This document shows, in pieces, positions 2,404 through 45,068 of a DNA stretch of 64,000 nt (its first letter is position 1; each line of letters opens with the position of its first letter). Under the pieces are notes generated by a model. The model was not told the origin of the DNA. It did not search any database and worked only from the letters and a program-made list of their open reading frames with translations. A program made the translations under genes and the position numbers. Location of the stretch: positions 1,798,001 to 1,862,000 of the forward strand of contig OZ218963.1 of the NCBI GenBank assembly GCA_965112735.1, read 5' to 3'. The stretch is from Phaeosaccion multiseriatum (taxonomy: Eukaryota; Protista; Ochrophyta, other classes).

Positions 2404-2655
2404 TCGGGTCCAGGCGAGGTTTCTCGGGCCCGATAAAGCAGAAGCCTGCGGCGGCCTGCGGCCGAAAGTAAGAAGCCTGCGGCTGGCCTGCGGCCAGAAG
2501 CCTGCAGAAAGTAGCGAGAAGCCTGCCAAGTCCCCCATTTTTCTCCCAGCCTGAGAAGCCTGAAGCCTGACCACTGGCCTGCGGCCAGAAGCCCGAAGCC
2601 TGGAGGGGGCTACGGCCCAGAAGCCTAAAGCCCGAGAAACCTCGCCTGGAGCCGA
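2404..2655. mobile_element. MITE (252 bp) with ~26-bp TIRs and AGGCAG target-site duplication
   Basis: Left tcgggtccaggcgaggtttctcgggc (2404-2429) and right gcccgagaaacctcgcctggagccga (2630-2655), one mismatch. aggcag lies at 2398-2403 and 2656-2661. Internal GAAGCCTG subrepeats. A second copy of the interior starts at 44537. Confidence 0.85.
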
Positions 2656-11777: not shown

Positions 11778-14700
11778 ATGCCATCCTTCCGCGTAGAGCC
11801 ACCGACAGTGTCTCAATCAGCGGCTGTCCCAGGAGCACGCGCGGGGGATGAAGGACCGAGGGAAGGAGGGACAGCGAACCCAGGGGCGGAGGAGATAGTG
11901 GGCAGCTTCGGGGAAGGAGGGCAGACGGTAGCATCGCAAGAGTCCAATCTGAGTGAACTCCAACCCCTTGCTCCAGCGCGGGCCACAGAAACCGTACCTA
12001 CAGCAAGAGAGGATAGGGCATCAGTGGCAGCTTCAGGCTCAGCAGAAGGCGAGGCACAGACCGCCCCAGCATCTCCTGCGGGCGAGGCTTCCACCCCGAC
12101 CTCGAATGTAGAAAGCACGTTGCCCGGAGAGGTGGCGGGCGGTGAGTCAAGCGAAATCGCACAAACGCTGACCATTGATAGAGCTTGGCTGGAGAGGAGG
12201 AGGCAAAAAGCACCGCTCTCCCTCGCGAAGGTAAACGACGGCCCACCCAAACACTCTTGCTTCTTGGTTCGCACCGCCCCCTATCTCTCACCTGTCGCCA
12301 CGCTTTTCTATCGGACACTTATCGCTTGATCAGCAGATGCAAGGTCTGCTGATGTCCCTGTTGCCTTCCCCAACTCTCTCGAAAGCAACTCCTCGCCACA
12401 CTGCCCTTCACTCCCTCACCTCCTACCCCTGGTCGGTGACACGTGTTGCCTCTCTCTTCCACAGGTGACCATGGCAGCAACCGGATTGACCGTGCATTCC
12501 GCGCCGAGGCTTGCAACCCTCGCTGCCCAGGCGAGGAAGGAACATGCCGCTGAGCCGTCTGCTGGTGATGCTCATGCTGTCGCCACTGCTGCCGCCGCTG
12601 CTGCTGCCGCCGCTGATTCTTCGCTGTCCGCGCATACCTCAGCCCAAATAGACATAGCACAAGCAGCAAGAGTCAAAGGAGGAGGTGTGGGAGGAGTAGG
12701 GAAGGCAGGAGATGACGACGTACGAGAAGGCGTGGATCTGAATGCCTCAGCTGAGGCGGGGGAAATTCGCAGGGCCTCCTGGCGGAGATCAAGTGCTAGC
12801 AGAACAGGGGCCCTGAAACAATTAGGGAAGGAGGGGGGTGTGAGAAGGGAGGAGAGTGTCGTCGGAGTGGCAGGGGCCAATTTGCTTGTTGTAGGGCTTT
12901 CGTCTGCAGTTCAATTGTTGCGAGCGGCAGGCAAAGCACACAAGAGAAAAACACGGAAGGTAAGACAATTGATGGAGGAAAGAAGCATTCAGCAACGCAC
13001 TCTTTGCTCATGCAGAGATCGCACCCTCACAGGGATGTGAGGTAGTATGGGGTGGCACCGGATAGAGGGGAGGTCGTGCAGTTGGCAGAGAAGAGGCACA
13101 CTCCTGAGAGCCCCGTGAAGGTCTTCACATTCGCACTTTGGCTGAACCTCAAAGGAAAGGCCTTCCTTCGTGCCGTACCAGAGGCTCAAGACTTCTTGTT
13201 GTCTTCGCTCTGGTTTCACCTCGGAATCGCAGGTGTCGGATGAATGTCTTTGTGACGAGGAGGACGGGAAGGGGGGTCGAAGGCAGCCCATCGAGACGGG
13301 AAATGTTGCAACCAGTGGAGCAGGTATGCGGGAAAGTGTGTCCAGCGGGGAAGAGGATGGGTATCTAGGCACACATACGAGCTTTGTGGTCTCTTCGACA
13401 TATACCGTAGTCCACCGTGTGCTTCGATCTAAGTCGCCCTCCTGTCCTTTCCTACGGCCCCTTTGCAACGCGGACACCGAAATCTCGACACGGCACCGTG
13501 TGACACGCGCTTGCCCGCATACACACAACACGCGCACACACGCGCACACACGCACACACACACACACACCAGCCGTTGAGGACCTGTACAGAAGTAGCCG
13601 AACCGTGCGTCACGCGTTGGCCGCTTTGACGGTCTACATCGCCACCGGCCTGGTGATATACATGAACGTAGAAGGGTGGAGCGCGATAGATTGCATGTAC
13701 TTCTCCATGGCTACCATCACCACTGTGGGCTATGGAGACGTTGCCCCCAAAACCGCGGCGGGGAAGGTGCTGACCATCTTCTATGCCATGGAAGGGCTCG
13801 GCATGCTACTCGAGCTCATCAGCATGATGGGAAGGTAAGACTGAGCAAGAGAGCAAGAGCAACAATGTTGACATCCTGAACTGTTGGCGGTGCTTTGCCG
13901 CTTCTATGCTCTGCATGCGGCTTGTCCTCTGCCGCCAAAAGCAAAGAGGGTGTAGCCCCTTCCTCTCTATCTCTCTTTCTCTTTTGCCTTCTTCTCATGT
14001 ACCCCCCCCAACATCTCTCATTTCTCCCCTCCCCTTCTCTCTCTCCTCCAGATACATGATCGACACCTTCTTATCGCAGCACCACATGTCGAGCCAATCG
14101 CCACCCCAGTCGTCCACCTCTTTGGGAGGTCTGGGTAGGAGCTTGGCGCACCCGCACCTCCTCTACTACTGGGAGAAGATTCCATCTCGGCTGAGGACGC
14201 TGCTTCTTTCGCGGTGCATCATGTGGATGGCCCTGTCGATAGGGTAAGCACACGGCGGGAAAGCAAGAGGCAGGGCCTACCTGAAAAGGAGGAGGAGGGA
14301 AGGGGGGTTTGGAGTGAGGCACGGTATCACCAGACAGGTCACTTCTCCCCTTTCTCAAGCGAACTCTCCACTCCTCCAGCGCGAGATTCAGGCGTGCTTG
14401 ACAGCGTTGGTCAATCGCCTTTGCTATAGGAGAATGGGTTGATGTATTCGCTCCTTCTCTTGCTCCTTCCTAGTGTGTCGCTTCACTAACCTACTCAACC
14501 TACCCCCCCCCCTCCCCTCCCTTCCCCTCTCGCCTCCTCCTCCTCCTCCTCCTCCTCCTCCTCCTCCTCCTCCTCCTCCTCCTCCTCCTCCTCCTCCTCC
14601 TCCTCCTCCTCCTCCTCCTCCTCCTCCTCCTCCTCCTCCTCCTCCTCCTCCTCCTCCTCCTCCTCCTCCTCCTCCTCCTCCTCCTCCTCCTCCTCCTCCT

Positions 14701-22647: not shown

Positions 22648-24465
22648 CTATAGGGACATGACCAGCCGTCGGACATCCTCTCGCACAGCTAGTCCAGCGG
22701 ACCTGCCAGAAGAGGCACCCACTACTGTCGCCCCCCACACTCGGAAGAGAGCGTCTCTGGCGAACCACGCGCTGCCAGACCACGTAGCAGCCGCTTCATC
22801 TGCTCGATCCGCTGTCTCCATTGGCACAGGCGAAACGTCTCCAAAAAGAATCTCCTGGACAGACTCAGACTCGTGCTCGTGGTGTGGCGCATCGCTGACG
22901 AGCTCGTGCTCCTCGCCGAAAGCCAAGTTCTCGGGCTCCATGCCCACAAAGCCCAGAGTCCTCATTTCTGACAGCAGAGCCTGCGCCCGCTCCTCGTTTG
23001 CGCGCCGCCCTGCCGTTGTCGCCGTTCGTTCCCCTGCCGCTGCCGTAGCGCCTGGTGCTGCCCTCCCCAAGGGACGACAAGCCGCAATTGCGGAGGAGTA
23101 GCAGAGCCGCACGTCGTCGTTGTCGCTGCTCCCGGTACCACCGTGCCCAGTCATAAAGTCACGCAGCAAGGCAATTGCCTTTACACCGTCCCCAGCACTA
23201 CCCCAGGCTTCGATGACTGCGCTATAGCACTTGCCGCAGATGGTTAGCTCCACCTTTGCCATTTCTTCCAGCAGTTGGCTGCCCCGGTGCGGCTGACCAG
23301 CCTTCCGGCACGCATCAGTCGCGCAAATGTAGGTGCTGGCGTCGGCCTTGCCACCCTTCTCCTGCATCTCTACGAGGAGGGCCAAGCACCGGTCATACTC
23401 ACCAGCCTCTAAACACGCCCTCATTGCCGCATTGTAGCAGGGGGTGTTGACCCCGCCCTCCGTTGTCCCTTCCAGCTCGCACAGGAGACTGAGGGCCTTT
23501 TGGTAGTCTCCCACAACCGCACATGCGCCCATCACGGAGCCGTACACGTACTCATTTGGAACCAATCCCACCTTGCCCACTTCGTCAAACAAATCCAAAG
23601 CCTTTTGAAGCTCTCCTGCGCGGCCTACGGCGTTTATAGCGGAGCAGTAGATCCTCAAATCGGGTTTAATGCCCTTCCCAGGCATCTCTCGCATCAAGCC
23701 CACCGCCCTCTGCCACTCGCCCGCGGCTCCACAGGCATTTATGGCAGCAGAATAGCACACCACATTGGCGCCTATACCCTGTCGGTCCATCTCACGCAAC
23801 ATGGTCAGGGCCTGGTCTGGATCAGGGTTCTCTCCCTGGCCACAAGCGTGAATCGCTGAGCTGTACGTGTAGCAGTCGGGCTCCAGACCTGCCGCTTGCA
23901 TCTCGGCCACCAGCTCCAGTGCCTTCTCTGTCTGCCCCGCGTTTCCACACGCTGTGATGATCGCATTATACGTCACCACAGTCGGTGTTAAGCCCGTCTC
24001 TCGCATTTCGGCCAGGAGCGCCAACGCCCCCTGCCACCTCCTGCAGCGGCCCACAGCGGTAATGGAACCATTGTAGATAAAGACATTGAGAGGAAGCCCG
24101 TCCTGCTTGGCTTCCGACAGCGCCCTGGCTACCTTCCTCCACGGTTCGGTCGAGGGGCATGCATGGCCCAGGTACTTGATGCGCCGCAAGAGAGCCTTTT
24201 GCCTGGCCCATATCTCCCTGCCATTCCCCTCGGCAGCTGCTGCAGCAGCAGCCGCAGCCGCAGTAGGACGGCGACGACTACGAGGAGGACCAGGAGAAGG
24301 AGTAGAAGTTCTGGTGGTAGGAGGAGGAGGCGACTTGGGGCCAGGTCGTGGATGAGGGGGGCGAGAGTTTAGCCCTCCGGCGCCGTACAGTCTACATGGC
24401 GGTCGAGCCCAGGCGATAGAGGCCTTTCTGCGACGCTGGGCCCCGGCTATGGCGAACCGACGCAT
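22648..24465 (-). CDS. P-class pentatricopeptide repeat protein (single exon, ~9-10 repeats), probably organellar
   Basis: 35-aa repeats such as VVTYNAIITACGNAGQTEKALELVAEMQAAGLEPD and VVCYSAAINACGAAGEWQRAVGLMREM. Arg-rich N-terminus. Confidence 0.92.
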   Translation of the reverse strand: MRRFAIAGAQRRRKASIAWARPPCRLYGAGGLNSRPPHPRPGPKSPPPPTTRTSTPSPGPPRSRRRPTAAAAAAAAAAEGNGREIWARQKALLRRIKYLGHACPSTEPWRKVARALSEAKQDGLPLNVFIYNGSITAVGRCRRWQGALALLAEMRETGLTPTVVTYNAIITACGNAGQTEKALELVAEMQAAGLEPDCYTYSSAIHACGQGENPDPDQALTMLREMDRQGIGANVVCYSAAINACGAAGEWQRAVGLMREMPGKGIKPDLRIYCSAINAVGRAGELQKALDLFDEVGKVGLVPNEYVYGSVMGACAVVGDYQKALSLLCELEGTTEGGVNTPCYNAAMRACLEAGEYDRCLALLVEMQEKGGKADASTYICATDACRKAGQPHRGSQLLEEMAKVELTICGKCYSAVIEAWGSAGDGVKAIALLRDFMTGHGGTGSSDNDDVRLCYSSAIAACRPLGRAAPGATAAAGERTATTAGRRANEERAQALLSEMRTLGFVGMEPENLAFGEEHELVSDAPHHEHESESVQEILFGDVSPVPMETADRADEAAATWSGSAWFARDALFRVWGATVVGASSGRSAGLAVREDVRRLVMSL

Positions 24466-38726: not shown

Positions 38727-40716
38727 CTATCCGGTCAGCGCTACAGCTGCGGAGGAGGACGGGGCTACCGACGCCAGCACGAGCACACTGACGTCACCGT
38801 CTACCCCCCCTCCAGCGCCCCCACTCCTCAGTCGTGCTTGCCCTACTGCATGCTGCTGCGGGTGCGCCTCGACGTGTGCTTGCTCCTCCTCAGACGTCGT
38901 GGTCTTGTGCCGCGAGGCCGCCACGCTCTGCTGGACGCTTGCCAGACGAGCTTGGAGGAGCCTTTTGGCCTCTTGGCTTTCCGCAAAGCGACGACCCGAA
39001 TCCCGGCGATGCTCCTGTGTCGACTCTTCACTCACCCCACGGCCTGATCGCCCATCCCCCCTGATTCGAGCACCAGTGCCACCTGCTGCTCTCACAGCTG
39101 ATGCTCTCCCGGCTGTGGCTCCGCCTTCCTGCTTACTCCTCCTGCTGCTACTTTGCAGCCTCTTCATCTCATTGGTCTTCATCTGCAGCGCCACGCGTAA
39201 CTTGACGAGGTCTGCGTCTTTAGAGGCGAGAACGCGTTGGAACGTCGCCCTGTCTTTGCGGCGGGCTTCGCGCTCGCTCCTGAAAACCTCTCTACTTTCC
39301 TGACGCGTCCGCTCCGCCAGTGTGTCGCTGTGTTCAGCTGCATCCCCGCACTGCTGACTGCTCTCTTCCTGTCGCTCCTGTTGCTGCAGTCCGCTGCCGA
39401 CTGCGCTCCCTGCTGTTGCAGGTGCTGTTGCAGGAGCAGCGGCAGGTCTTCCAGCGGAAAGGGACGACGGAAGGGCGACTCTGACGTTGGGCATGGACAA
39501 CTGGCGGCTGATGGCACCTCCACTCCCCAGGGCCCCATCTATCCACCGCCCAGTTGTCGACATCTGAGACGGAGATGGGAGACCCAAGGGCAACAAACAT
39601 CCCACCGCAAGAGGTCAAAAGAACGGCTCGCTTCTTTGCAGAGGGAAAGTGGAAAGTGGAAAGGCCAGACAGAAGGAGGTGGAAAGAGGCGGAACGCCAC
39701 TTCCCAGCCAAAGCGATACTCACCGTGGGTGTATGATGGACGGAGCCAGCAGAAGCAACAACCCCGCAGTCTCGTAGACTCATCAGCGCATCTCTCTCCG
39801 CCTCCGCCGAGGAGAGGGAGCGTGTGACCCGGGCAAGGGCAGCCGATAGTTTTTCGATCTCCCCCTGTTTCTCTGCGAGGCTCTTCTCGGCCGCACTTGC
39901 TCGCTCTTGTGTGCGGTTGCACTGATCCACAAGTTGGCACATGTGCCGATTGGCCTCTGTCACGCAGTCCTGAGCCGCGTCCAGCTTGGCTCGAAGTATC
40001 TCCACCTGCGGGAGGAGCCATCGGCCGAGAGCCAGGGGAGGGGTTTAGACACCCCTCGCACTACGTAGCCACCATTATAGCCTACCTACCTTCGCTTTCT
40101 CAGCCTCTATTCTCTGCAAGGCCGTCTCGTTGGTGGTAAGAGAAAAGGTTCGCCCCATCTGCAGCAGCAAACGCTGCATCTCTCCCATCCCCATGCTATC
40201 GCCGCCCCCCTCGCCATCTGCCTCCACCTCGCTATCTGCATCCACCGCGATATCTTCTCGCCAATCCCCGTCACTTGTCACTCGCCCATCTGCTGCGGAT
40301 GATTGAGCCTGAGAGGACTGCGTCCCTTTTTCAGCCTTCGACGCAGTGCTTCTGCCCTTCCTCTGAGAGGCACGCCGTCCACGCCCCTCTCTACCTGCGT
40401 CTTTCACTTCCTCTCCAGAAGTTCTTCTTTCTTTCGCTCCTCTCCTATCTGGTGGTGACGTTCTCTCAGTTCTTTCGAGCTTTTCGGCTTCAGCATCCCT
40501 TTTCTTACTCTGTCTCCTTCCCGTCCTCCTTTTCCTCTTCTCCCTCTCGTCCTGCTTTCGGTCATCGCTCTGTTCAGACTTGTGCCCCCTGGTTGCCATC
40601 AAATCGTCCAGATTTAACGTCGCCACTGGCGTTGCACATCCGCTCGTGTCCTCTATCCTTCCTCCCTCATCCCGCTTCCGTCTTCTCTCTGACTTTCTAC
40701 GAGGCGAATCCTTCAT
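38727..40716 (-). CDS. Multi-exon coiled-coil protein of unknown function
   Basis: Three long charged/heptad ORF blocks (MKDSPRRK.., EILRAKLDAAQD.., REARRKDRATFQRVLASKDADLVKLR) with plausible splice sites. Confidence 0.55.
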
Positions 40717-40922
40717 CAAATTTTTGATCTTACAATGTACAAGGTGATGCTTCGGGCTGCGCCCTCGGCAGGGAGGAGGAGGAGGAGAGAAGAGGGTTGG
40801 AGTCGGCAAGAAGTGGGAGAGTGGGGGGGAGGAAGGTGAAAGGGGGAGGCGAGGCAGGAGGAGCAGGGACTCACAAATGGCGAGTGCAGGATGTGGAAAG
40901 ACTCAGAAAATCGGCTCCAGGC

Positions 40923-43871
40923 AGTTCTCTGTAGTCCGTATGTCTAATAGTACCGTGATGTGGGGCACCTGCCCCACGAAATTATGGTTTTGGATATTTT
41001 ATGGGCCACAAATGCTCGTTTTTCAAGTTTTTTATCCAATATTTTTTGGTTGTGGGGCATTCTCCCCCCCCTCCCCACATGGATTTTTATTCATTCACAG
41101 CATCAGCATATTTGCACAGGGCAGCTATGTAAGAGGAGCAGCGGCTGCGCGGACGATACCCGGCTGTAACAGCTGATGCCAGTGGTGGGAGGGGCATCTC
41201 CCACGTGAATTTGCAGGAGAACAGAGCATACCATGGCTGACGTCGCTGTTGCTACGGTTCCGGAAGCACCAGCAGCAGAGGGGGAAGAAGCACCGCTTAC
41301 TGCAGAGCAGCAGCAGATTCAGAACCTCCGAAACAACACCATCGCCCCACGCTCGAGAAGTGGATATGCATGCGCCTCCACCATGCTGATCCGATACCTC
41401 TTCCGCAAGCACCCGGAGCTACTGGACCCTGACTTCAGGACAGCATTTGCTCCACCGGAAGGGGAAGAGGAGGAAGACGGGGAAGATGGGGAAGAGGAGG
41501 AAGCACAGAGGAGAGCAGCAGCAGCCGCAGCAGCCGCCGCACCTGGCGGAGCGGGTGGTGCCACTGCAGCGGCACAGCAGACGCCGGCTGAGGTGTCGAG
41601 AGCAGCGAAAGCCCAAGCAAAGGCCAAGAAGAAGGCTGAGGCGCAGTGGACGAAGCGGGTGAAGGCACACTTGATCCAAGCACCTCGGGCGCCGCACCCT
41701 TTGCTGTTCCATCTGCTGACAGCCGACGCGTTCTTCGGGTGGCTGCTTGAAGTCAAGAAGGGGCCGAAGGGCTTATCCAAGGCCGGTGCACAGTCGAAAC
41801 GCTCTGCACTCTTCAATCTGTACAGAGACTACCATCAGGAGGAACAGCACCGCAAATTGCAAAGCGACCTTGCGACGCTGACCAAGGGGCTGAAGAGGAC
41901 GATCGCAGGAGAGAAGCAGGAGGGAAATGTCGAAGTCAGAGAAGGGAAGGCTCCCATGCCGTTCGCTCTCTACCGCGCTCTTGCCAAAGGTAAATTCCCA
42001 GCTGTGTGGAGTCAGTGGACAGTGGAAACTAGTGGAGTGGGTGGAGACAAGTGGCTGATGCATTGAATGCCCCCCACTCACTTCCTAGCCCTGACGCCGT
42101 CTTTGGTTGCCACTGTTTCCTTCGCTTGTGTACATCGCAGCAATGCTGAGCTCGGCAGTCTGTGAGAACGGGCACAGACAGGGCGCCTTTGGCCACCCCT
42201 TCCTCGTTCTCTCCTGGAATCTGATGTGCCGCGCCACCAACTGTGTGGAGATTTGTCTCGATCATCTCGAGTGGAAGGGGGACGCGCTCTGCGTCTATTT
42301 TGGGAAGCAAAAGGGCGATCAGCTGGGAGAGAAGGCCCGACATCCTCGCCACGTCTACGCGAATCCAATCATGCCGGAGATCTGCCCCGTCCTCGCGCTT
42401 GGTGTTTACCTCCTGAGCTTTGGTTTTGAGAAGAACGCGCTGTTCGCTGGCAACAATCAGTACGATAGGTATTGCGGCTTCCTCAGACGTACGGCGGCGG
42501 CGAACTCGTCCATTTTGGAAGGCATGGGGCTGACTCCAGAGGACCTCGGCACTCATTCTGGGCGCAAGGGCGCTGCCTCGCACGTCACAAGCGGCTCGTC
42601 CGCTGCTCCCAACCCAATTGCTGTGCAACTTCGAATGGGATGGTCTCTTCCCGGCGTGCAGGGCATCTACTTCAACCCCATCAATGCAGCAGATCAGTAT
42701 GTGGGCCGGGCTGCCTCCGGCGCGAACATCTCAGCGAAGGAGTTTGCATTGCTTCCTCCCTTTTTTCAGCGCCTCAAGGTGGACGGCACAGCGAAGGAGG
42801 GCATTGAAGACGTGCTCGCGGGAGCCATTGTGAGCTGCTTCAGGGACGTGCCGCTGAGATTGAGGAAGGTGGCTGAATTCTGTCTTGCCAGTGTGGTGTA
42901 CCACGCCGGCTTTCTGCGCAGCACTCTTCAGGAGAATCACCCTCTTTTCACGACACAGCTCTTCCGAGATCAAAGGTTGCTGGCGGACCTTTCAGAGCAT
43001 GTCGTGCTGAAGTATCCGGACGAGACGGACGAGATTTCTGCAACCGGGATTCCTCCCCACGTCGTGCAGCTGAGGCAATTCCAAGTCGTGGCGGACAGCG
43101 TGGCCTCTCTAGGCGGCAAGCTTGAGGTGTTGGGCCAGACGATCAAGGTCGACTTGGAGACGCTGATCCGTGACGTTCTGGAGGAGAATGCACAGGCCTC
43201 TGGCACTGTCACCAGTCTGGGTGTGAGCAGGGCCCTGCAGACGACCCTCGACGCAGCCTTTTCTAAGAGTGGGCTCAGCGACCTTCTCGCGGCTCACCAG
43301 GCAGGCACTCTGGGCCTTGGTGAGGGTTCGAGCAGCGCCCCGCCCTCTTCTTCTTGTGCAGGTGCAGATCAGCCACCTCTGTATCTCTACAACGGCCGGT
43401 GGCATACCCTTCCCGAGCACTTTGAGGTCCCTAGCTTCACTGTGCGCGCTGCTTGGGATGCTTGGATGACAGGCACTCCTCGCCTTCGAGAATTCACGAC
43501 AGCAGACGTGCAGGGGAGGGCGGAGAAGCGAAGGATGTCAAAATTTTGCTGTTTGATGGGTGCGATTGAATCCGCGGCGAAAGAAAAGGGGCTCTGGAAG
43601 GACAAGCCGACGCTTGAAGAAGCGCGAAGCATGTTTGACGCAGTCAAAGACGCCTTTGACATCAAGTCTCGTTCTGATTCTCACAAGCGCCGCTTCAATC
43701 AGCTGGTGTGGACCACCGTGTATAATTTATGGAGCGCGCAGCAGGCGGACGCGAAAAAACGGGCGAAGCGGGCGAGGGCGAAGGAAAGTGGCACTGGTGC
43801 AGACGAGTCGAAGGAGGGGGATGGAGGTGATAGCGGTGCAGAGGACGACGAGGAGGGAGGTGGCAGCAGCA

Positions 43872-43905
<34 letters not shown>

Positions 43906-44536
43906 AACAGGAGGAGGCGGAGCCGGAGGAGGACGAGGAGGAAGGGGTGGGGGAAGGGGGGCCCAAAAAAAACAGCGTACTGGTACTGGTACTGCTTCTG
44001 ATGCTGCTTCTGCTGCTGCCTCTGATGCGGCCGCTGCGGCCGCTACTGCCGCTGCTGCCGCGTCAGCAGCGCCGTCGTTGGGCGGCTTGAGAGAGGGAGA
44101 CATGGCCTTCACATGCTCGTATGGCTGTACTAAGCCCTCGCAAGTCAAGCTGTTCCTCTGCCCATCCGAAAGAGCGTGTGGAAACCTCGTGCACCACATG
44201 TGCACCGTCGAGTTTTGCGACAGCAAGGGTTTTGCGGAAGGCGATTTTGACTGCTACTGTAAGCCATGCATGATTGAGGACGGACACTAAGTGTGTCTGT
44301 AAATATGAATACCATTGTTATCGTGGTAATACCATTAAATCGTCATATCATAGCGTAGTATATTTTGGAGGAGGAGGGGAGAGATACACACACAAAAAAG
44401 GAGGGGGGGGGGGAGGGGCGCTACTGGTCCATATTGGGTACTGTACTAAAAATACCCACTTTTAAAAAAATTGGGTACTAAAAATACCCACTTTCACCGA
44501 GTGGGGCATCTCGCCCCACCAAAACCGGTCATCAAT
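40923..44536 (+). mobile_element. Crypton-type tyrosine-recombinase DNA transposon, nested in a MITE TIR
   Basis: Contains the recombinase ORF. Flanked by the two halves of the MITE TIR (tcggctccaggc 40911-40922; aggtttctcgggcc from 44537). Subterminal palindromes at 40960-40977 and 44501-44519. Confidence 0.8.
41233..44290 (+). CDS. Crypton tyrosine recombinase with GCR1_C-like region and C-terminal PHD-like finger (2 exons, 968 aa)
   Basis: Exons 41233-41989 and 42141-44290, phase-1 GT-AG intron, no internal stops. Catalytic set: R (WNLMCRATN), K (KQKGDQ), HxxR (GTHSGRKG), W (RMGW), Y (VQGIYF). Also RHVYANP..PEICPVLALG and a C-terminal C-x3-C-x10-C-x5-C-x4-H-x2-C-x18-C-x2-C motif. Confidence 0.9.
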
Positions 44537-44720
44537 AGGTTTCTCGGGCCGATAAAGCAGAAGCCTGCGGCGGCCTGCGGCCGAAAGTAAGAAGCCTGCG
44601 GCTGGCCTGCGGCCAGAAGCCTGCAGAAAGTAGCGAAAAGCCTGCCAAGTCCCCCATTTTTCTTCCAGCCTGCGAAGCCTGAAGCCTGGCCACTGCCTGG
44701 CCTGCGGCCAGAAGCCTGGC
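44537..44720. mobile_element. Second, interrupted and truncated copy of the 2404-2655 MITE
   Basis: Near-identical to 2417-2595. The outer part of its TIR is at 40911-40922; no right TIR was seen. Confidence 0.85.
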
Positions 44721-45068
44721 TGCGATGCGTCTCCGCACTTGAGCTGCTGGGCCTGCAGGTCATCCATGCAGGAAATCGGCTGCCGCGTGGAGGAAGTGGG
44801 TGGGAAGGCTGTTAGCCTCCGAGCCAGGGCAGTGGCGACCCTTCTCGAACTGCAACTCACCTGGTGGTCTGCTGCTCACTCCAACCCTCCTACAAGTGAC
44901 GTAGAAGATATGTGAAATATGAAGATATGAAGTGATGATGTATTGATAGACGCGCTACTGTCCTACTCCACCCCTTCACTTATTTCTTGTCCTGACACTT
45001 ATCCTAGTGCCTTGCCTGTCCCTTTGCCTTTGTTCCTTCCCTTGCCCTGTCTCGCCTACTTGCCACAC

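What the first reader, a model, noticed from the sequence alone, without database searches (positions are those of the whole stretch)
41233..44290. Intact Crypton tyrosine recombinase fused to a PHD-like finger
Seen: a spliced 968-aa ORF with all catalytic residues (R ~42230, K, HSGR ~42554, W, Y ~42668). After a Gly/Ala linker it ends in C-x3-C-x10-C-x5-C-x4-H-x2-C-x18-C-x2-C (44114-44269). Known: these recombinase motifs match stramenopile/oomycete Cryptons, and C4HC3 is the PHD histone-reader pattern. Inference: a possibly still active recombinase transposon whose integration is steered by a chromatin reader. I do not recall this architecture among described Crypton groups, but could not check.
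Basis: partly seen in the sequence, partly recalled or inferred. Interest (0 to 1): 0.85.

Follow-up and report, generated by a model that had tools for sequence, protein, structure and literature searches.

The report
Crypton transposon with zinc-finger tail
This is one intact, transcribed copy of a young, many-copy "jumping gene" of the Crypton type whose DNA-cutting enzyme (a tyrosine recombinase) carries an extra cysteine-rich tail that no relative has; the tail is laid out like a PHD zinc finger, but its fold and any chromatin reading remain unproven.

Summary
A two-exon gene (41233-41989 and 42141-44290) gives a 968-aa protein, and assembled contigs of two runs skip exactly the predicted 151-nt GT..AG intron.

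- **Recombinase:** R283, K310, H391, R394, W420 and Y429 sit in columns at least 90% conserved across 46 family members. A confident model (pLDDT 88) matches Flp, Ndc10, Cre and Xer recombinases (Z 14.2 to 11.3).
- **Relatives:** the closest are oomycete and metagenomic CryptonS-like proteins (38-39% identity). They share the family's C-terminal region up to residue about 785.
- **Activity:** the element is about 3.6 kb with no terminal inverted or long repeats. It is roughly 20-fold over-represented and differs from the majority sequence at only three bases and one 3-nt indel.
- **Tail:** the last 64 residues carry C-x3-C-x10-C-x5-C-x4-H-x2-C-x18-C-x2-C. The order is non-random and PHD-like, but the spacing is not canonical.
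- **Tail, negative results:** Pfam, PDB and an exhaustive search of 1.84 billion proteins find no relative. The single-sequence model is unusable (pLDDT 53).
- **Verdict:** "Active Crypton" is supported, "PHD" is plausible but unshown, and "chromatin-steered integration" is untested.
- **Prior scan notes:** sister copies on other pieces of this genome were already followed up, with the same verdict.

The parts
40926..44536 (+). Whole Crypton element, about 3.6 kb. Boundaries are good to about 9 bp. AG-TTCTC (40924-40930) and AGGTTTCTC (44535-44543) stand at the two junctions.
   Evidence: An uninterrupted copy of the flanking repeat at window 2404-2426 reads TCGGGTCCAGGCGAG|GTTTCTC. Here TCGGCTCCAGGCAG ends at 40925 and GTTTCTCGGG resumes at 44537. 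Contigs of other copies of that repeat end or diverge at 44537 (table 7). High-depth contigs cover 40923-44443. There are no terminal inverted or long direct repeats.
40960..40977 (+). Left sub-terminal palindrome GTGGGGCAcctGCCCCAC, a candidate recombinase binding site (inferred).
   Evidence: The pattern GTGGGGC-N(1-7)-GCCCCAC occurs only twice in 64 kb, both times inside the element ends, against 0.02 expected.
41233..41989 (+). Exon 1, residues 1-252 plus the first base of codon 253. It holds the N-terminal SAM-like/core-binding region, interrupted by an acidic and Ala-rich low-complexity insert.
   Evidence: ORF and splice phase. Weak Phage_int_SAM_4 hit, E 0.058; 6 of 46 family members hit the same model, best E 1.2e-4. 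Homologues align from about residue 160.
41990..42140 (+). Intron, 151 nt, GT..AG.
   Evidence: Sequence. Contigs of X5 (632 nt, depth 2337) and X6 skip exactly 151 nt, while the genomic runs X4 and X1 retain it (tables 5 and 8).
42143..42904 (+). Tyrosine-recombinase catalytic domain, residues 254-507. Catalytic residues: R283 (42230), K310 (42311), H391 (42554), R394 (42563), W420 (42641), Y429 (42668).
   Evidence: Invariant or at least 90% conserved columns in the 46-sequence alignment A1. AlphaFold2 model pLDDT 88.2. The Foldseek top 50 are tyrosine recombinases or their inactive relative Ndc10. VIA-align Z 14.2 to Flp, 12.8 to Ndc10, 11.4 to Cre/Tre, 11.3 to XerA over model residues 1-254.
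42905..43753 (+). Family-specific, mostly helical C-terminal region, residues 508 to about 790, shared with the oomycete relatives.
   Evidence: Homologues align up to query residue 776-789, median 780. High pLDDT helices in the model. Kojima and Jurka 2011 describe a conserved C-terminal region in CryptonS.
43754..44095 (+). Basic KKRAKRARAK patch (43754-43783, NLS-like by inference), then an acidic/Gly/Ala low-complexity linker holding an RGG box and KKQR (43934-43978).
   Evidence: Translation. No homologue aligns here. Reads and contigs are cut at 43844-44028 because of the simple repeats.
44096..44290 (+). Cys/His-rich tail, residues 905-968, plus the stop codon. Ligand pattern spans 44114-44269. 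Net charge is -4. Residue 957 is Cys here and Tyr in the contigs of all four runs laid.
   Evidence: Pattern and shuffle test. G>A at 44253 in all runs gives C957Y. Contigs over 44029-44337 have the same depth as the gene body, so most or all copies appear to carry the tail. No homologue found.
44443..44494 (+). Two exact 20-nt direct repeats (GTACTAAAAATACCCACTTT) downstream of the stop. Each sits in a small GGGTA..TACCC palindrome.
   Evidence: family D5; sequence.
44501..44519 (+). Right sub-terminal palindrome GTGGGGCatctcGCCCCAC, 17 bp from the right boundary.

Best explanation
Window 40926-44536 is one copy of an autonomous, recently active DNA transposon of the Crypton class, closest to the stramenopile group CryptonS. 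Its single two-exon gene is transcribed and spliced.

The 968-aa protein has five parts: an N-terminal core-binding region, a catalytic domain with a complete R-K-H-R-W-Y active site, the helical C-terminal region typical of the oomycete relatives, a basic patch with an RGG/low-complexity linker, and a lineage-specific 64-residue Cys/His tail.

Mobility is inferred by analogy with Cryptons and bacterial integrases. The recombinase would excise the element as a circle and reinsert it by site-specific recombination at a short sequence resembling the element's own junction (here AG..TTCTC). The two sub-terminal GTGGGGC..GCCCCAC palindromes are likely protein-binding sites.

The tail is most likely a two-zinc, cross-brace module of the PHD/RING kind (my estimate about 0.6). 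Because it is acidic, it more probably contacts a basic protein surface such as a histone tail or a partner protein than DNA (about 0.35 of the total). Fold, metal binding, ligand and any effect on target choice are all untested.
For: - Gene model and splicing.
- Family: 190 hits, best E 1e-103, from Phytophthora, Aphanomyces, Globisporangium and metagenomes. Some are named integrase or core-binding domain protein.
- Active site: conserved in alignment A1.
- Fold: pLDDT 88.2. The top structural matches are tyrosine recombinases plus their inactive relative Ndc10, Z 14.2 to 11.3.
- Multi-copy and young: genomic run X4 has element contigs at depth 2335-2758 against 111.5 for the unique flank contig. 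The majority sequence differs from this copy at 2 synonymous sites, 1 missense site and one 3-nt indel. Other notes of the scan flag the same 3.06-kb gene on several other pieces of the genome.
- Transcript: in X5, high depth is confined to about 41176-44343 and the intron is removed.
- Element anatomy: no TIR or LTR, a boundary from an uninterrupted copy of the target repeat, and palindromes only at the two ends.
- Tail: ordered C4HC3 ligands that are improbable under shuffling. The ten best named language-model neighbours are all PHD clusters, score 0.89-0.81. Net charge is -4.
Against: - No sequence method recognises the tail as PHD or any other domain.
- The first and second ligand pairs have non-canonical spacing, x3 and x5.
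- The AlphaFold2 single-sequence model is unreliable (pLDDT 52.8) and finds nothing.
- The language-model score is below the tool's own 0.9 and 170-feature marks.
- All copies are near-identical, so keeping the tail says nothing about selection.
- Contigs do not bridge the low-complexity linker 43844-44028, so continuity of the mRNA between recombinase and tail rests on the open genomic frame and the absence of any reported joint.
- Runs X5 and X6 are only guessed to be 'DNA?', so the spliced form could in principle be an intron-less DNA copy.
- Copy number from contig depth is rough.
- Element ends rest on one insertion compared with one intact target copy.
Confidence: 0.72

Rival explanations
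1. One reading: the tail is a genuine PHD histone reader that steers integration to particular chromatin, for example marked promoters.
For: - C4HC3 ligand order with C-x4-H-x2-C and a terminal aromatic-x-C-x2-C in the majority copies.
- PHD clusters are the nearest language-model neighbours.
- The tail is acidic.
- PHD fingers are common accessory domains of other transposons (PMC8557442).
- The PiggyMac cysteine-rich domain contacts histone H3 (PMC8086355).
- This copy sits about 120 bp from the start of a neighbouring minus-strand ORF, which is a single anecdote.
Against: - Fold not shown.
- No Pfam PHD hit even at E 10.
- No aromatic residue between the fourth Cys and the His (C-G-N-L-V-H), where methyl-lysine-cage readers such as ING/BPTF carry Trp. 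That comparison is from my own knowledge and was not tested here.
- No insertion-site survey was possible.
- An earlier follow-up on a sister copy reported nothing supporting promoter targeting (unchecked).
Confidence: 0.2
2. The tail is a DNA-binding cross-brace zinc finger that recognises the element's own ends, as the C-terminal cysteine-rich domain of piggyBac transposase does. It is not a chromatin reader.
For: - The piggyBac precedent: a domain first taken for a PHD finger binds specific repeats in the transposon ends and is essential for transposition (PMC5861402).
- This element has repeated sub-terminal motifs that need a binder: the palindromes at 40960 and 44501, and the 20-nt repeats at 44443 and 44475.
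Against: - The tail has net charge -4, with only 5 basic residues in 64, which is poor for DNA binding on its own.
- Relatives without the tail presumably recognise their ends through the core-binding and catalytic domains.
- The basic residues lie in the linker (RGG, KKQR) rather than in the finger.
Confidence: 0.13
3. The tail is a recently captured or read-through fragment with no role in transposition. It is carried along only because all copies descend from one recent master.
For: - No relative among 120 listed homologues or 1.84 billion representatives has it.
- It is joined by a long low-complexity linker typical of this genome's coding sequence.
- Copies are too alike to show selection.
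- This copy tolerates a Tyr-to-Cys change at residue 957.
Against: - The ordered eight-ligand arrangement is very unlikely by chance, so it derives from a real zinc-finger domain.
- The frame is open to the end in a family that has just multiplied about 20-fold.
Confidence: 0.15
4. It is a domesticated host gene derived from a Crypton, not a mobile element.
For: Crypton recombinases have been domesticated repeatedly (PMC3212892), and fusions to new domains are typical of domestication.
Against: - The catalytic set is complete.
- Depth is about 20-fold that of the flank, and copies are near-identical.
- The same gene is flagged on many other pieces of the genome.
- It interrupts another repeat.
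Confidence: 0.02

Closest known systems
CryptonS elements of oomycetes and a diatom (Kojima and Jurka 2011, PMC3212892)
   Same: - One gene for a tyrosine recombinase with the R-H-R-Y set.
- A conserved C-terminal region after the catalytic domain, and no GCR1_C domain.
- No terminal inverted or long repeats, and short similar sequences at the two junctions.
- The best sequence hits are Phytophthora, Aphanomyces and Globisporangium proteins.
   Different: - Only 38-39% identical to the nearest relative.
- Carries an extra linker and a 64-residue Cys/His tail that none of the retrieved relatives has.
- The ends are not the TATGG repeats reported for most CryptonS.
- No direct comparison with Repbase consensus sequences was possible.
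CryptonF-1_cRei, the active Crypton of Chlamydomonas reinhardtii (Lopez-Cortegano et al. 2023, PMC9977147)
   Same: An algal Crypton with evidence of current activity. Integration is at a short motif resembling the element terminus (CACCG into CAYCG there; AG..TTCTC suggested here).
   Different: It belongs to a different Crypton group, whose accessory domain is the GCR1_C DNA-binding domain. Activity there was seen directly in mutation-accumulation lines; here it is only inferred.
C-terminal cysteine-rich domains of piggyBac-family transposases (PMC5861402, PMC8086355)
   Same: A small two-zinc cross-brace module at the C-terminus of a transposase, once predicted to be a PHD finger. It serves to bind either the transposon ends or histone H3.
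   Different: The catalytic enzyme is unrelated (DDD transposase, not tyrosine recombinase). There is no sequence similarity, and the fold of the present tail is not established.
PHD fingers carried by other transposable elements (Chlamys Penelope-like elements, CR1, Rehavkus; PMC8557442)
   Same: An accessory Cys4-His-Cys3 module added to a mobile-element enzyme, and common in algal elements.
   Different: Those are recognised by PHD profiles and sit in reverse-transcriptase or DDE elements. None is reported on a tyrosine-recombinase DNA transposon in the papers searched.
Flp recombinase and the kinetochore protein Ndc10
   Same: They are the best structural matches of the catalytic domain (Z 14.2 and 12.8). 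Like Flp and Cre, this protein has Trp in place of the second His.
   Different: About 10% sequence identity. Flp belongs to a yeast plasmid, and Ndc10 is an inactive domesticated relative.

Membership tests
Tyrosine recombinase superfamily | Catalytic-domain fold shared with Cre, Flp, Xer and lambda Int | tested here: met
   AlphaFold2 model pLDDT 88.2. The Foldseek top 50 are tyrosine recombinases or Ndc10. VIA-align Z 14.2 to Flp (219 residues aligned, rmsd 3.6), 11.4 to Cre/Tre, 11.3 to XerA.
Tyrosine recombinase superfamily | Active-site residues R, K, H-x-x-R, H/W and the nucleophile Y | tested here: met
   R283 is invariant. K310, H391, R394, W420 and Y429 are at least 90% conserved in 46 sequences. 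Their equivalence to the Cre or Flp residues was not checked residue by residue in a superposition.
Tyrosine recombinase superfamily | Match to the Pfam Phage_integrase profile and the SAM-like N-terminal domain | tested here: inconclusive
   The window protein has no Phage_integrase hit and only E 0.058 to Phage_int_SAM_4. Among 46 family members, 2 hit Phage_integrase (best E 0.017) and 6 hit Phage_int_SAM_4 (best E 1.2e-4).
Crypton DNA transposons | Mobile unit whose only enzyme is a tyrosine recombinase, with no reverse transcriptase, LTRs or TIRs | tested here: met
   The 3.6-kb unit holds one gene. There are no terminal inverted or long direct repeats.
Crypton DNA transposons | Several dispersed copies in the genome | tested here: met
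   Contig depth is 2335-2758 against 111.5 for the unique flank in genomic run X4, a rough figure. The scan's notes place the same gene on several other pieces (unchecked by me).
Crypton DNA transposons | Short (4-6 bp) direct repeats at the termini that match the target | tested here: inconclusive
   AG-TTCTC and AGGTTTCTC stand at the two junctions of this one copy. Other copies could not be fetched.
Crypton DNA transposons | Excision as a circle and site-specific reintegration | not testable with these tools
   The single read-laying run reported no end-to-end joint of the element. Contigs cannot show rare circles.
CryptonS group | Recombinase clusters with the oomycete and diatom elements and shares their conserved C-terminal region; no GCR1_C | tested here: met
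   The best hits are oomycete proteins, aligned to query residue 776-789. No GCR1_C in Pfam. No tree against Repbase CryptonS, F, A and I sequences was made, because those sequences are not at hand.
PHD finger | Cys4-His-Cys3 ligand order with canonical spacing | tested here: inconclusive
   The order is met, and C-x4-H-x2-C and the final C-x2-C are canonical. The first pair is C-x3-C and the second C-x5-C, so the strict pattern fails.
PHD finger | Recognised by PHD sequence profiles | tested here: not met
   No Pfam family at E up to 10. No PDB chain. No true hit among 1.84 billion representatives.
PHD finger | Interleaved (cross-brace) two-zinc fold | tested here: inconclusive
   The single-sequence AlphaFold2 model has pLDDT 52.8, and its fold search is meaningless. 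The language-model neighbours are all PHD but score below the tool's threshold.
PHD finger | Aromatic residue two positions before the seventh ligand | tested here: inconclusive
   The contigs of all four runs laid read Tyr957, while this copy reads Cys957. That PHD fingers carry Trp here is from my own knowledge.
PHD finger | Binds two zinc ions and a histone tail | not testable with these tools
   This needs purified protein.
RING finger (C3HC4) | His as the fourth ligand | tested here: not met
   His is the fifth ligand.

The most novel reading that the evidence does not exclude
This would be a natural tyrosine-recombinase transposase that carries its own histone-tail reader, so that a site-specific integrase is directed by chromatin state as well as by a short DNA motif. 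That combination is not described for any Crypton or other tyrosine-recombinase element in the papers I searched.
Probability: 0.2. Interest if true: 0.7.

Novelty: new variant of a known kind. Interest (0 to 1): 0.45.

Why it matters
Cryptons are the least understood class of eukaryotic DNA transposons. Their activity was first seen directly only in 2023 (PMC9977147), and nothing is known about how they choose targets.

This family is young, expressed and has about 20 copies, with a complete active site, so it is a practical system for studying Crypton excision and integration.

If the extra tail is a working zinc finger, it would be the first accessory chromatin- or protein-binding module reported on a Crypton recombinase. 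It would parallel the chromodomains of retrotransposon integrases and the cysteine-rich domains of piggyBac transposases.

If the tail is inert, the element is simply a new CryptonS-like family.

Tried and rejected
- **Pfam** on exon 1, exon 2, three sub-pieces and the tail alone gave nothing significant.
- **PDB sequence searches** found nothing, with the protein, the family profile or the tail.
- **Exhaustive phmmer of the tail** against 1.84 billion representatives gave two hits at E 2e-4. Both are repeats in bacterial surface proteins with no cysteine conserved, so I rejected them as spurious.
- **AlphaFold2 of the tail alone** gave pLDDT 52.8, and its Foldseek search returned only E > 4 noise.
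- **A host PHD finger in the window**, to seed a profile comparison: none found.
- **Terminal inverted or direct repeats**: only low-complexity matches.
- **The 25 letters** that a contig of X1 places between 40904 and 44716 are absent from the window.
- **RING reading**: rejected on ligand order.
- **Domestication**: rejected on copy number.
- **Organism B** holds near-identical pieces at depth 2-5, against 2337 in a run of the same study. I take this as possible carry-over between libraries, not as evidence of a second host.
- **Host organism**: I did not identify it myself. 'Stramenopile alga' comes from earlier notes of the scan.
Full report
**1. What is in the sequence**

The ORF list shows two open frames on the + strand, 41233-42066 and 42107-44290. 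A GT at 41990 and an AG at 42139-42140 join them in phase, with one base of codon 253 in exon 1 and two in exon 2. The result is a 2907-nt coding sequence of 968 codons with no internal stop.

The last 64 residues read GDMAFTCSYGCTKPSQVKLFLCPSERACGNLVHHMCTVEFCDSKGFAEGDFDCYCKPCMIEDGH. A loose PHD-type pattern matches nowhere else in the six-frame translation of the whole window.

**2. The recombinase**

Pfam and PDB sequence searches do not recognise the protein. A family search with the exon-2 product did find relatives:
- It gave 190 hits, best E 1e-103 at 38-39% identity.
- They come from Phytophthora, Aphanomyces, Globisporangium and many metagenomic or transcriptomic contigs.
- Some sources call them 'integrase' or 'core-binding domain protein'.

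In a 46-sequence alignment (A1), R283 in WNLMCR is invariant. K310, H391 and R394 (THSGRKGAA), W420 and Y429 are at least 90% conserved.

An AlphaFold2 model of residues 254-799 built on A1 has mean pLDDT 88.2. Its 50 best Foldseek matches are all tyrosine recombinases or their inactive relative Ndc10: Flp, XerH, Cre, XerA, Tn1549 integrase. Re-alignment over model residues 1-254 gives Z 14.2 for Flp (219 residues, rmsd 3.6), 12.8 for Ndc10, 11.4 for Cre/Tre and 11.3 for XerA. The enzyme class is therefore shown by fold and by conserved catalytic residues, not just by motif resemblance.

Homologues align from about residue 160 to residue 776-789. They therefore share the helical region after the catalytic domain. 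Kojima and Jurka (PMC3212892) describe that region as conserved among CryptonS elements, which lack the GCR1_C domain of fungal Cryptons.

**3. Is it a mobile element, and is it young?**

One read-laying run on 40600-44900 used four runs, all held as contigs. X4 has a 254-kb contig, so it is genomic.
- **Depth.** In X4 the element's contigs have depth 2335-2758, and the 5.2-kb contig covering the unique left flank has 111.5. That is roughly a 20-fold excess. The tool warns that depth is a poor copy-number measure, so this is an order of magnitude.
- **Independent lead.** The scan's notes flag the same 3.06-kb gene on several other pieces of this genome. I could not check this.
- **Divergence.** The contigs of X4, X1 and X5 differ from this copy at only three substitutions and one indel. 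These are 41421 A>T and 41880 G>C (both synonymous), 44253 G>A (Cys957 here, Tyr in the contigs) and an extra TCT after 43345 (one more Ser in a Ser run). X6 shows the first and third of these where its sparse contigs cover them.
- **Tail in all copies.** Contigs over 44029-44337 have the same depth as the body, so most or all copies appear to carry the tail.

**4. Expression and splicing**

Contigs of X5 (632 nt, depth 2337) and X6 skip exactly 151 nt with GT..AG ends. The genomic runs X4 and X1 have contigs that run into the intron (tables 5 and 8).

In X5, high depth is confined to about 41176-44343. The element's first 250 bp and last 190 bp are covered only weakly or by a variant contig. 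In X4 they have full depth. This is the footprint of an mRNA starting just upstream of the ATG and ending about 50 bp after the stop.

Two caveats apply:
- The run type of X5 and X6 is only guessed by the tool ('DNA?'), so an intron-less DNA copy is not formally excluded.
- No listed contig bridges the low-complexity stretch 43844-44028. Continuity of the transcript between recombinase and tail rests on the open genomic frame and the absence of any joint there.

X6 is labelled as another organism. It holds near-identical pieces at depth 2-5, in the same study as X5 (depth 2337). Carry-over between libraries is as likely as a second host.

**5. Element anatomy**

Downstream, 44537-44716 is 95% identical to window 2417-2593. 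This is a high-copy GCCTGCGGCC-rich repeat.
- The uninterrupted copy reads TCGGGTCCAGGCGAG|GTTTCTCGGG.
- At the finding, TCGGCTCCAGGCAG ends at 40925 and GTTTCTCGGG resumes at 44537.
- Contigs from other copies of the repeat diverge from this locus exactly at 44537 (table 7).

The element is therefore about 40926-44536 (3611 bp), inserted into a copy of that repeat. AG-TTCTC stands at the left junction and AGGTTTCTC at the right. This is the kind of short similarity between terminus and target expected for Crypton integration (PMC3212892; PMC9977147). The left match is only 14 nt, so the boundary is good to about 9 bp and needs other copies.

There are no terminal inverted or long direct repeats. 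The motif GTGGGGC-N(1-7)-GCCCCAC occurs only twice in 64 kb, against 0.02 expected. One is 35 bp inside the left end and the other 17 bp inside the right end, in the same orientation. I take them as candidate protein-binding sites, which is an inference.

**6. The tail**

Evidence against a recognisable domain:
- No Pfam family at E up to 10 and no PDB chain.
- An exhaustive phmmer search of 1.84 billion representatives gave two E 2e-4 hits. Both are repeats of bacterial surface proteins with none of the cysteines aligned.
- None of the 120 listed homologues has a Cys-rich C-terminus or the pattern. Those with long C-terminal extensions have few cysteines there.
- The tail is therefore specific to this lineage of elements, and no alignment can be built. 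The single-sequence AlphaFold2 model is unreliable (pLDDT 52.8) and its fold search returns noise.

Evidence for a PHD-like finger:
- The ligand order is far from random. With the tail's own composition, a loose C4HC3 order appears in 0.1% of 100,000 shuffles. The version with canonical C-x4-5-H-x2-C, C-x2-C and an aromatic two residues before the seventh ligand appears in 0.002%.
- The ten best named neighbours in the ESM Atlas are all PHD clusters, scoring 0.89-0.81. This is below the tool's own reliability marks, so it is only a lead.

Other features:
- The strict canonical pattern fails because the first two ligand pairs are C-x3-C and C-x5-C.
- The tail has net charge -4.
- The basic residues sit in the linker: KKRAKRARAK, an RGG box and KKQR.

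My estimate is about 0.6 that it is a two-zinc cross-brace finger of the PHD/RING kind. What it binds is open.

**7. Comparison with what is known**
- Kojima and Jurka list GCR1_C, a DDE transposase, C48 peptidase and HTH as Crypton accessory domains. They mention no PHD, and their only zinc-finger mentions concern domesticated host genes.
- The 2026 Glomhopper paper and the Chlamydomonas work on active Cryptons mention none either.
- Three full-text searches combining Crypton or tyrosine recombinase with PHD or zinc finger found no such architecture. This shows only that it is absent from the library searched.
- PHD fingers are a common accessory domain of other algal and animal elements (PMC8557442).
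- The C-terminal cross-brace fingers of piggyBac-family transposases show that such a module can bind transposon-end DNA (PMC5861402) or the histone H3 tail (PMC8086355). Pattern alone does not justify 'chromatin reader'.

**8. Verdict**

This is a real, intact, expressed copy of a young CryptonS-like transposon, a new variant of a known kind because of its lineage-specific zinc-finger-like tail. The PHD assignment is plausible but unshown, and chromatin-guided integration is untested. Three earlier follow-ups of this scan on sister copies reached the same conclusion.

- The structural proof of the recombinase fold.
- The exhaustive negative search for tail relatives.
- The shuffle statistics.
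- The copy-specific Tyr957Cys change.
- The element boundary from an intact target copy.
- The end-specific palindromes.

Noticed in passing
window 44537-44716 and 2386-2593: A GCCTGCGGCC-rich repeat, 95% identical between the two places. Its summed contig depth reaches about 12,000-14,600 in genomic run X4, against 111 for a unique contig, so it is probably present in very many copies. The Crypton sits inside one copy.
   Followed up: partly
window 40904 / 44716: One contig of run X1 (depth 6.6, close to that run's unique depth of about 9) joins 40904 to 44716 with 25 unrelated letters between. This may be an allele lacking both the Crypton and the adjoining repeat, or a low-complexity misjoin. 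The 25 letters are absent from the window.
   Followed up: partly
window 44443-44494: Two exact 20-nt direct repeats (GTACTAAAAATACCCACTTT) lie downstream of the stop. Each sits within a GGGTA..TACCC mini-palindrome, just before the right sub-terminal palindrome.
   Followed up: no
runs X5 and X6: A run labelled as a different organism holds near-identical pieces of the element at depth 2-5, while a run of the same study holds them at depth above 2000. This looks like carry-over between libraries rather than a second host.
   Followed up: no
homologues in alignment A1: Four of the 46 aligned family members hit the OTU cysteine-protease profile (best E 3.3e-5). Some relatives of this recombinase therefore carry a protease, recalling the C48 peptidase reported for some CryptonS elements.
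   Followed up: no
window 22651-24465 (-): A 605-aa ORF with strong pentatricopeptide-repeat matches (PPR_2, E 3.7e-48), which is an ordinary host gene.
   Followed up: no
window 40075-40809 (-): A 244-aa Glu/Arg/Lys-rich ORF with no Pfam match begins about 120 bp from the Crypton's left end, so this copy lies next to the 5' side of a possible host gene.
   Followed up: no
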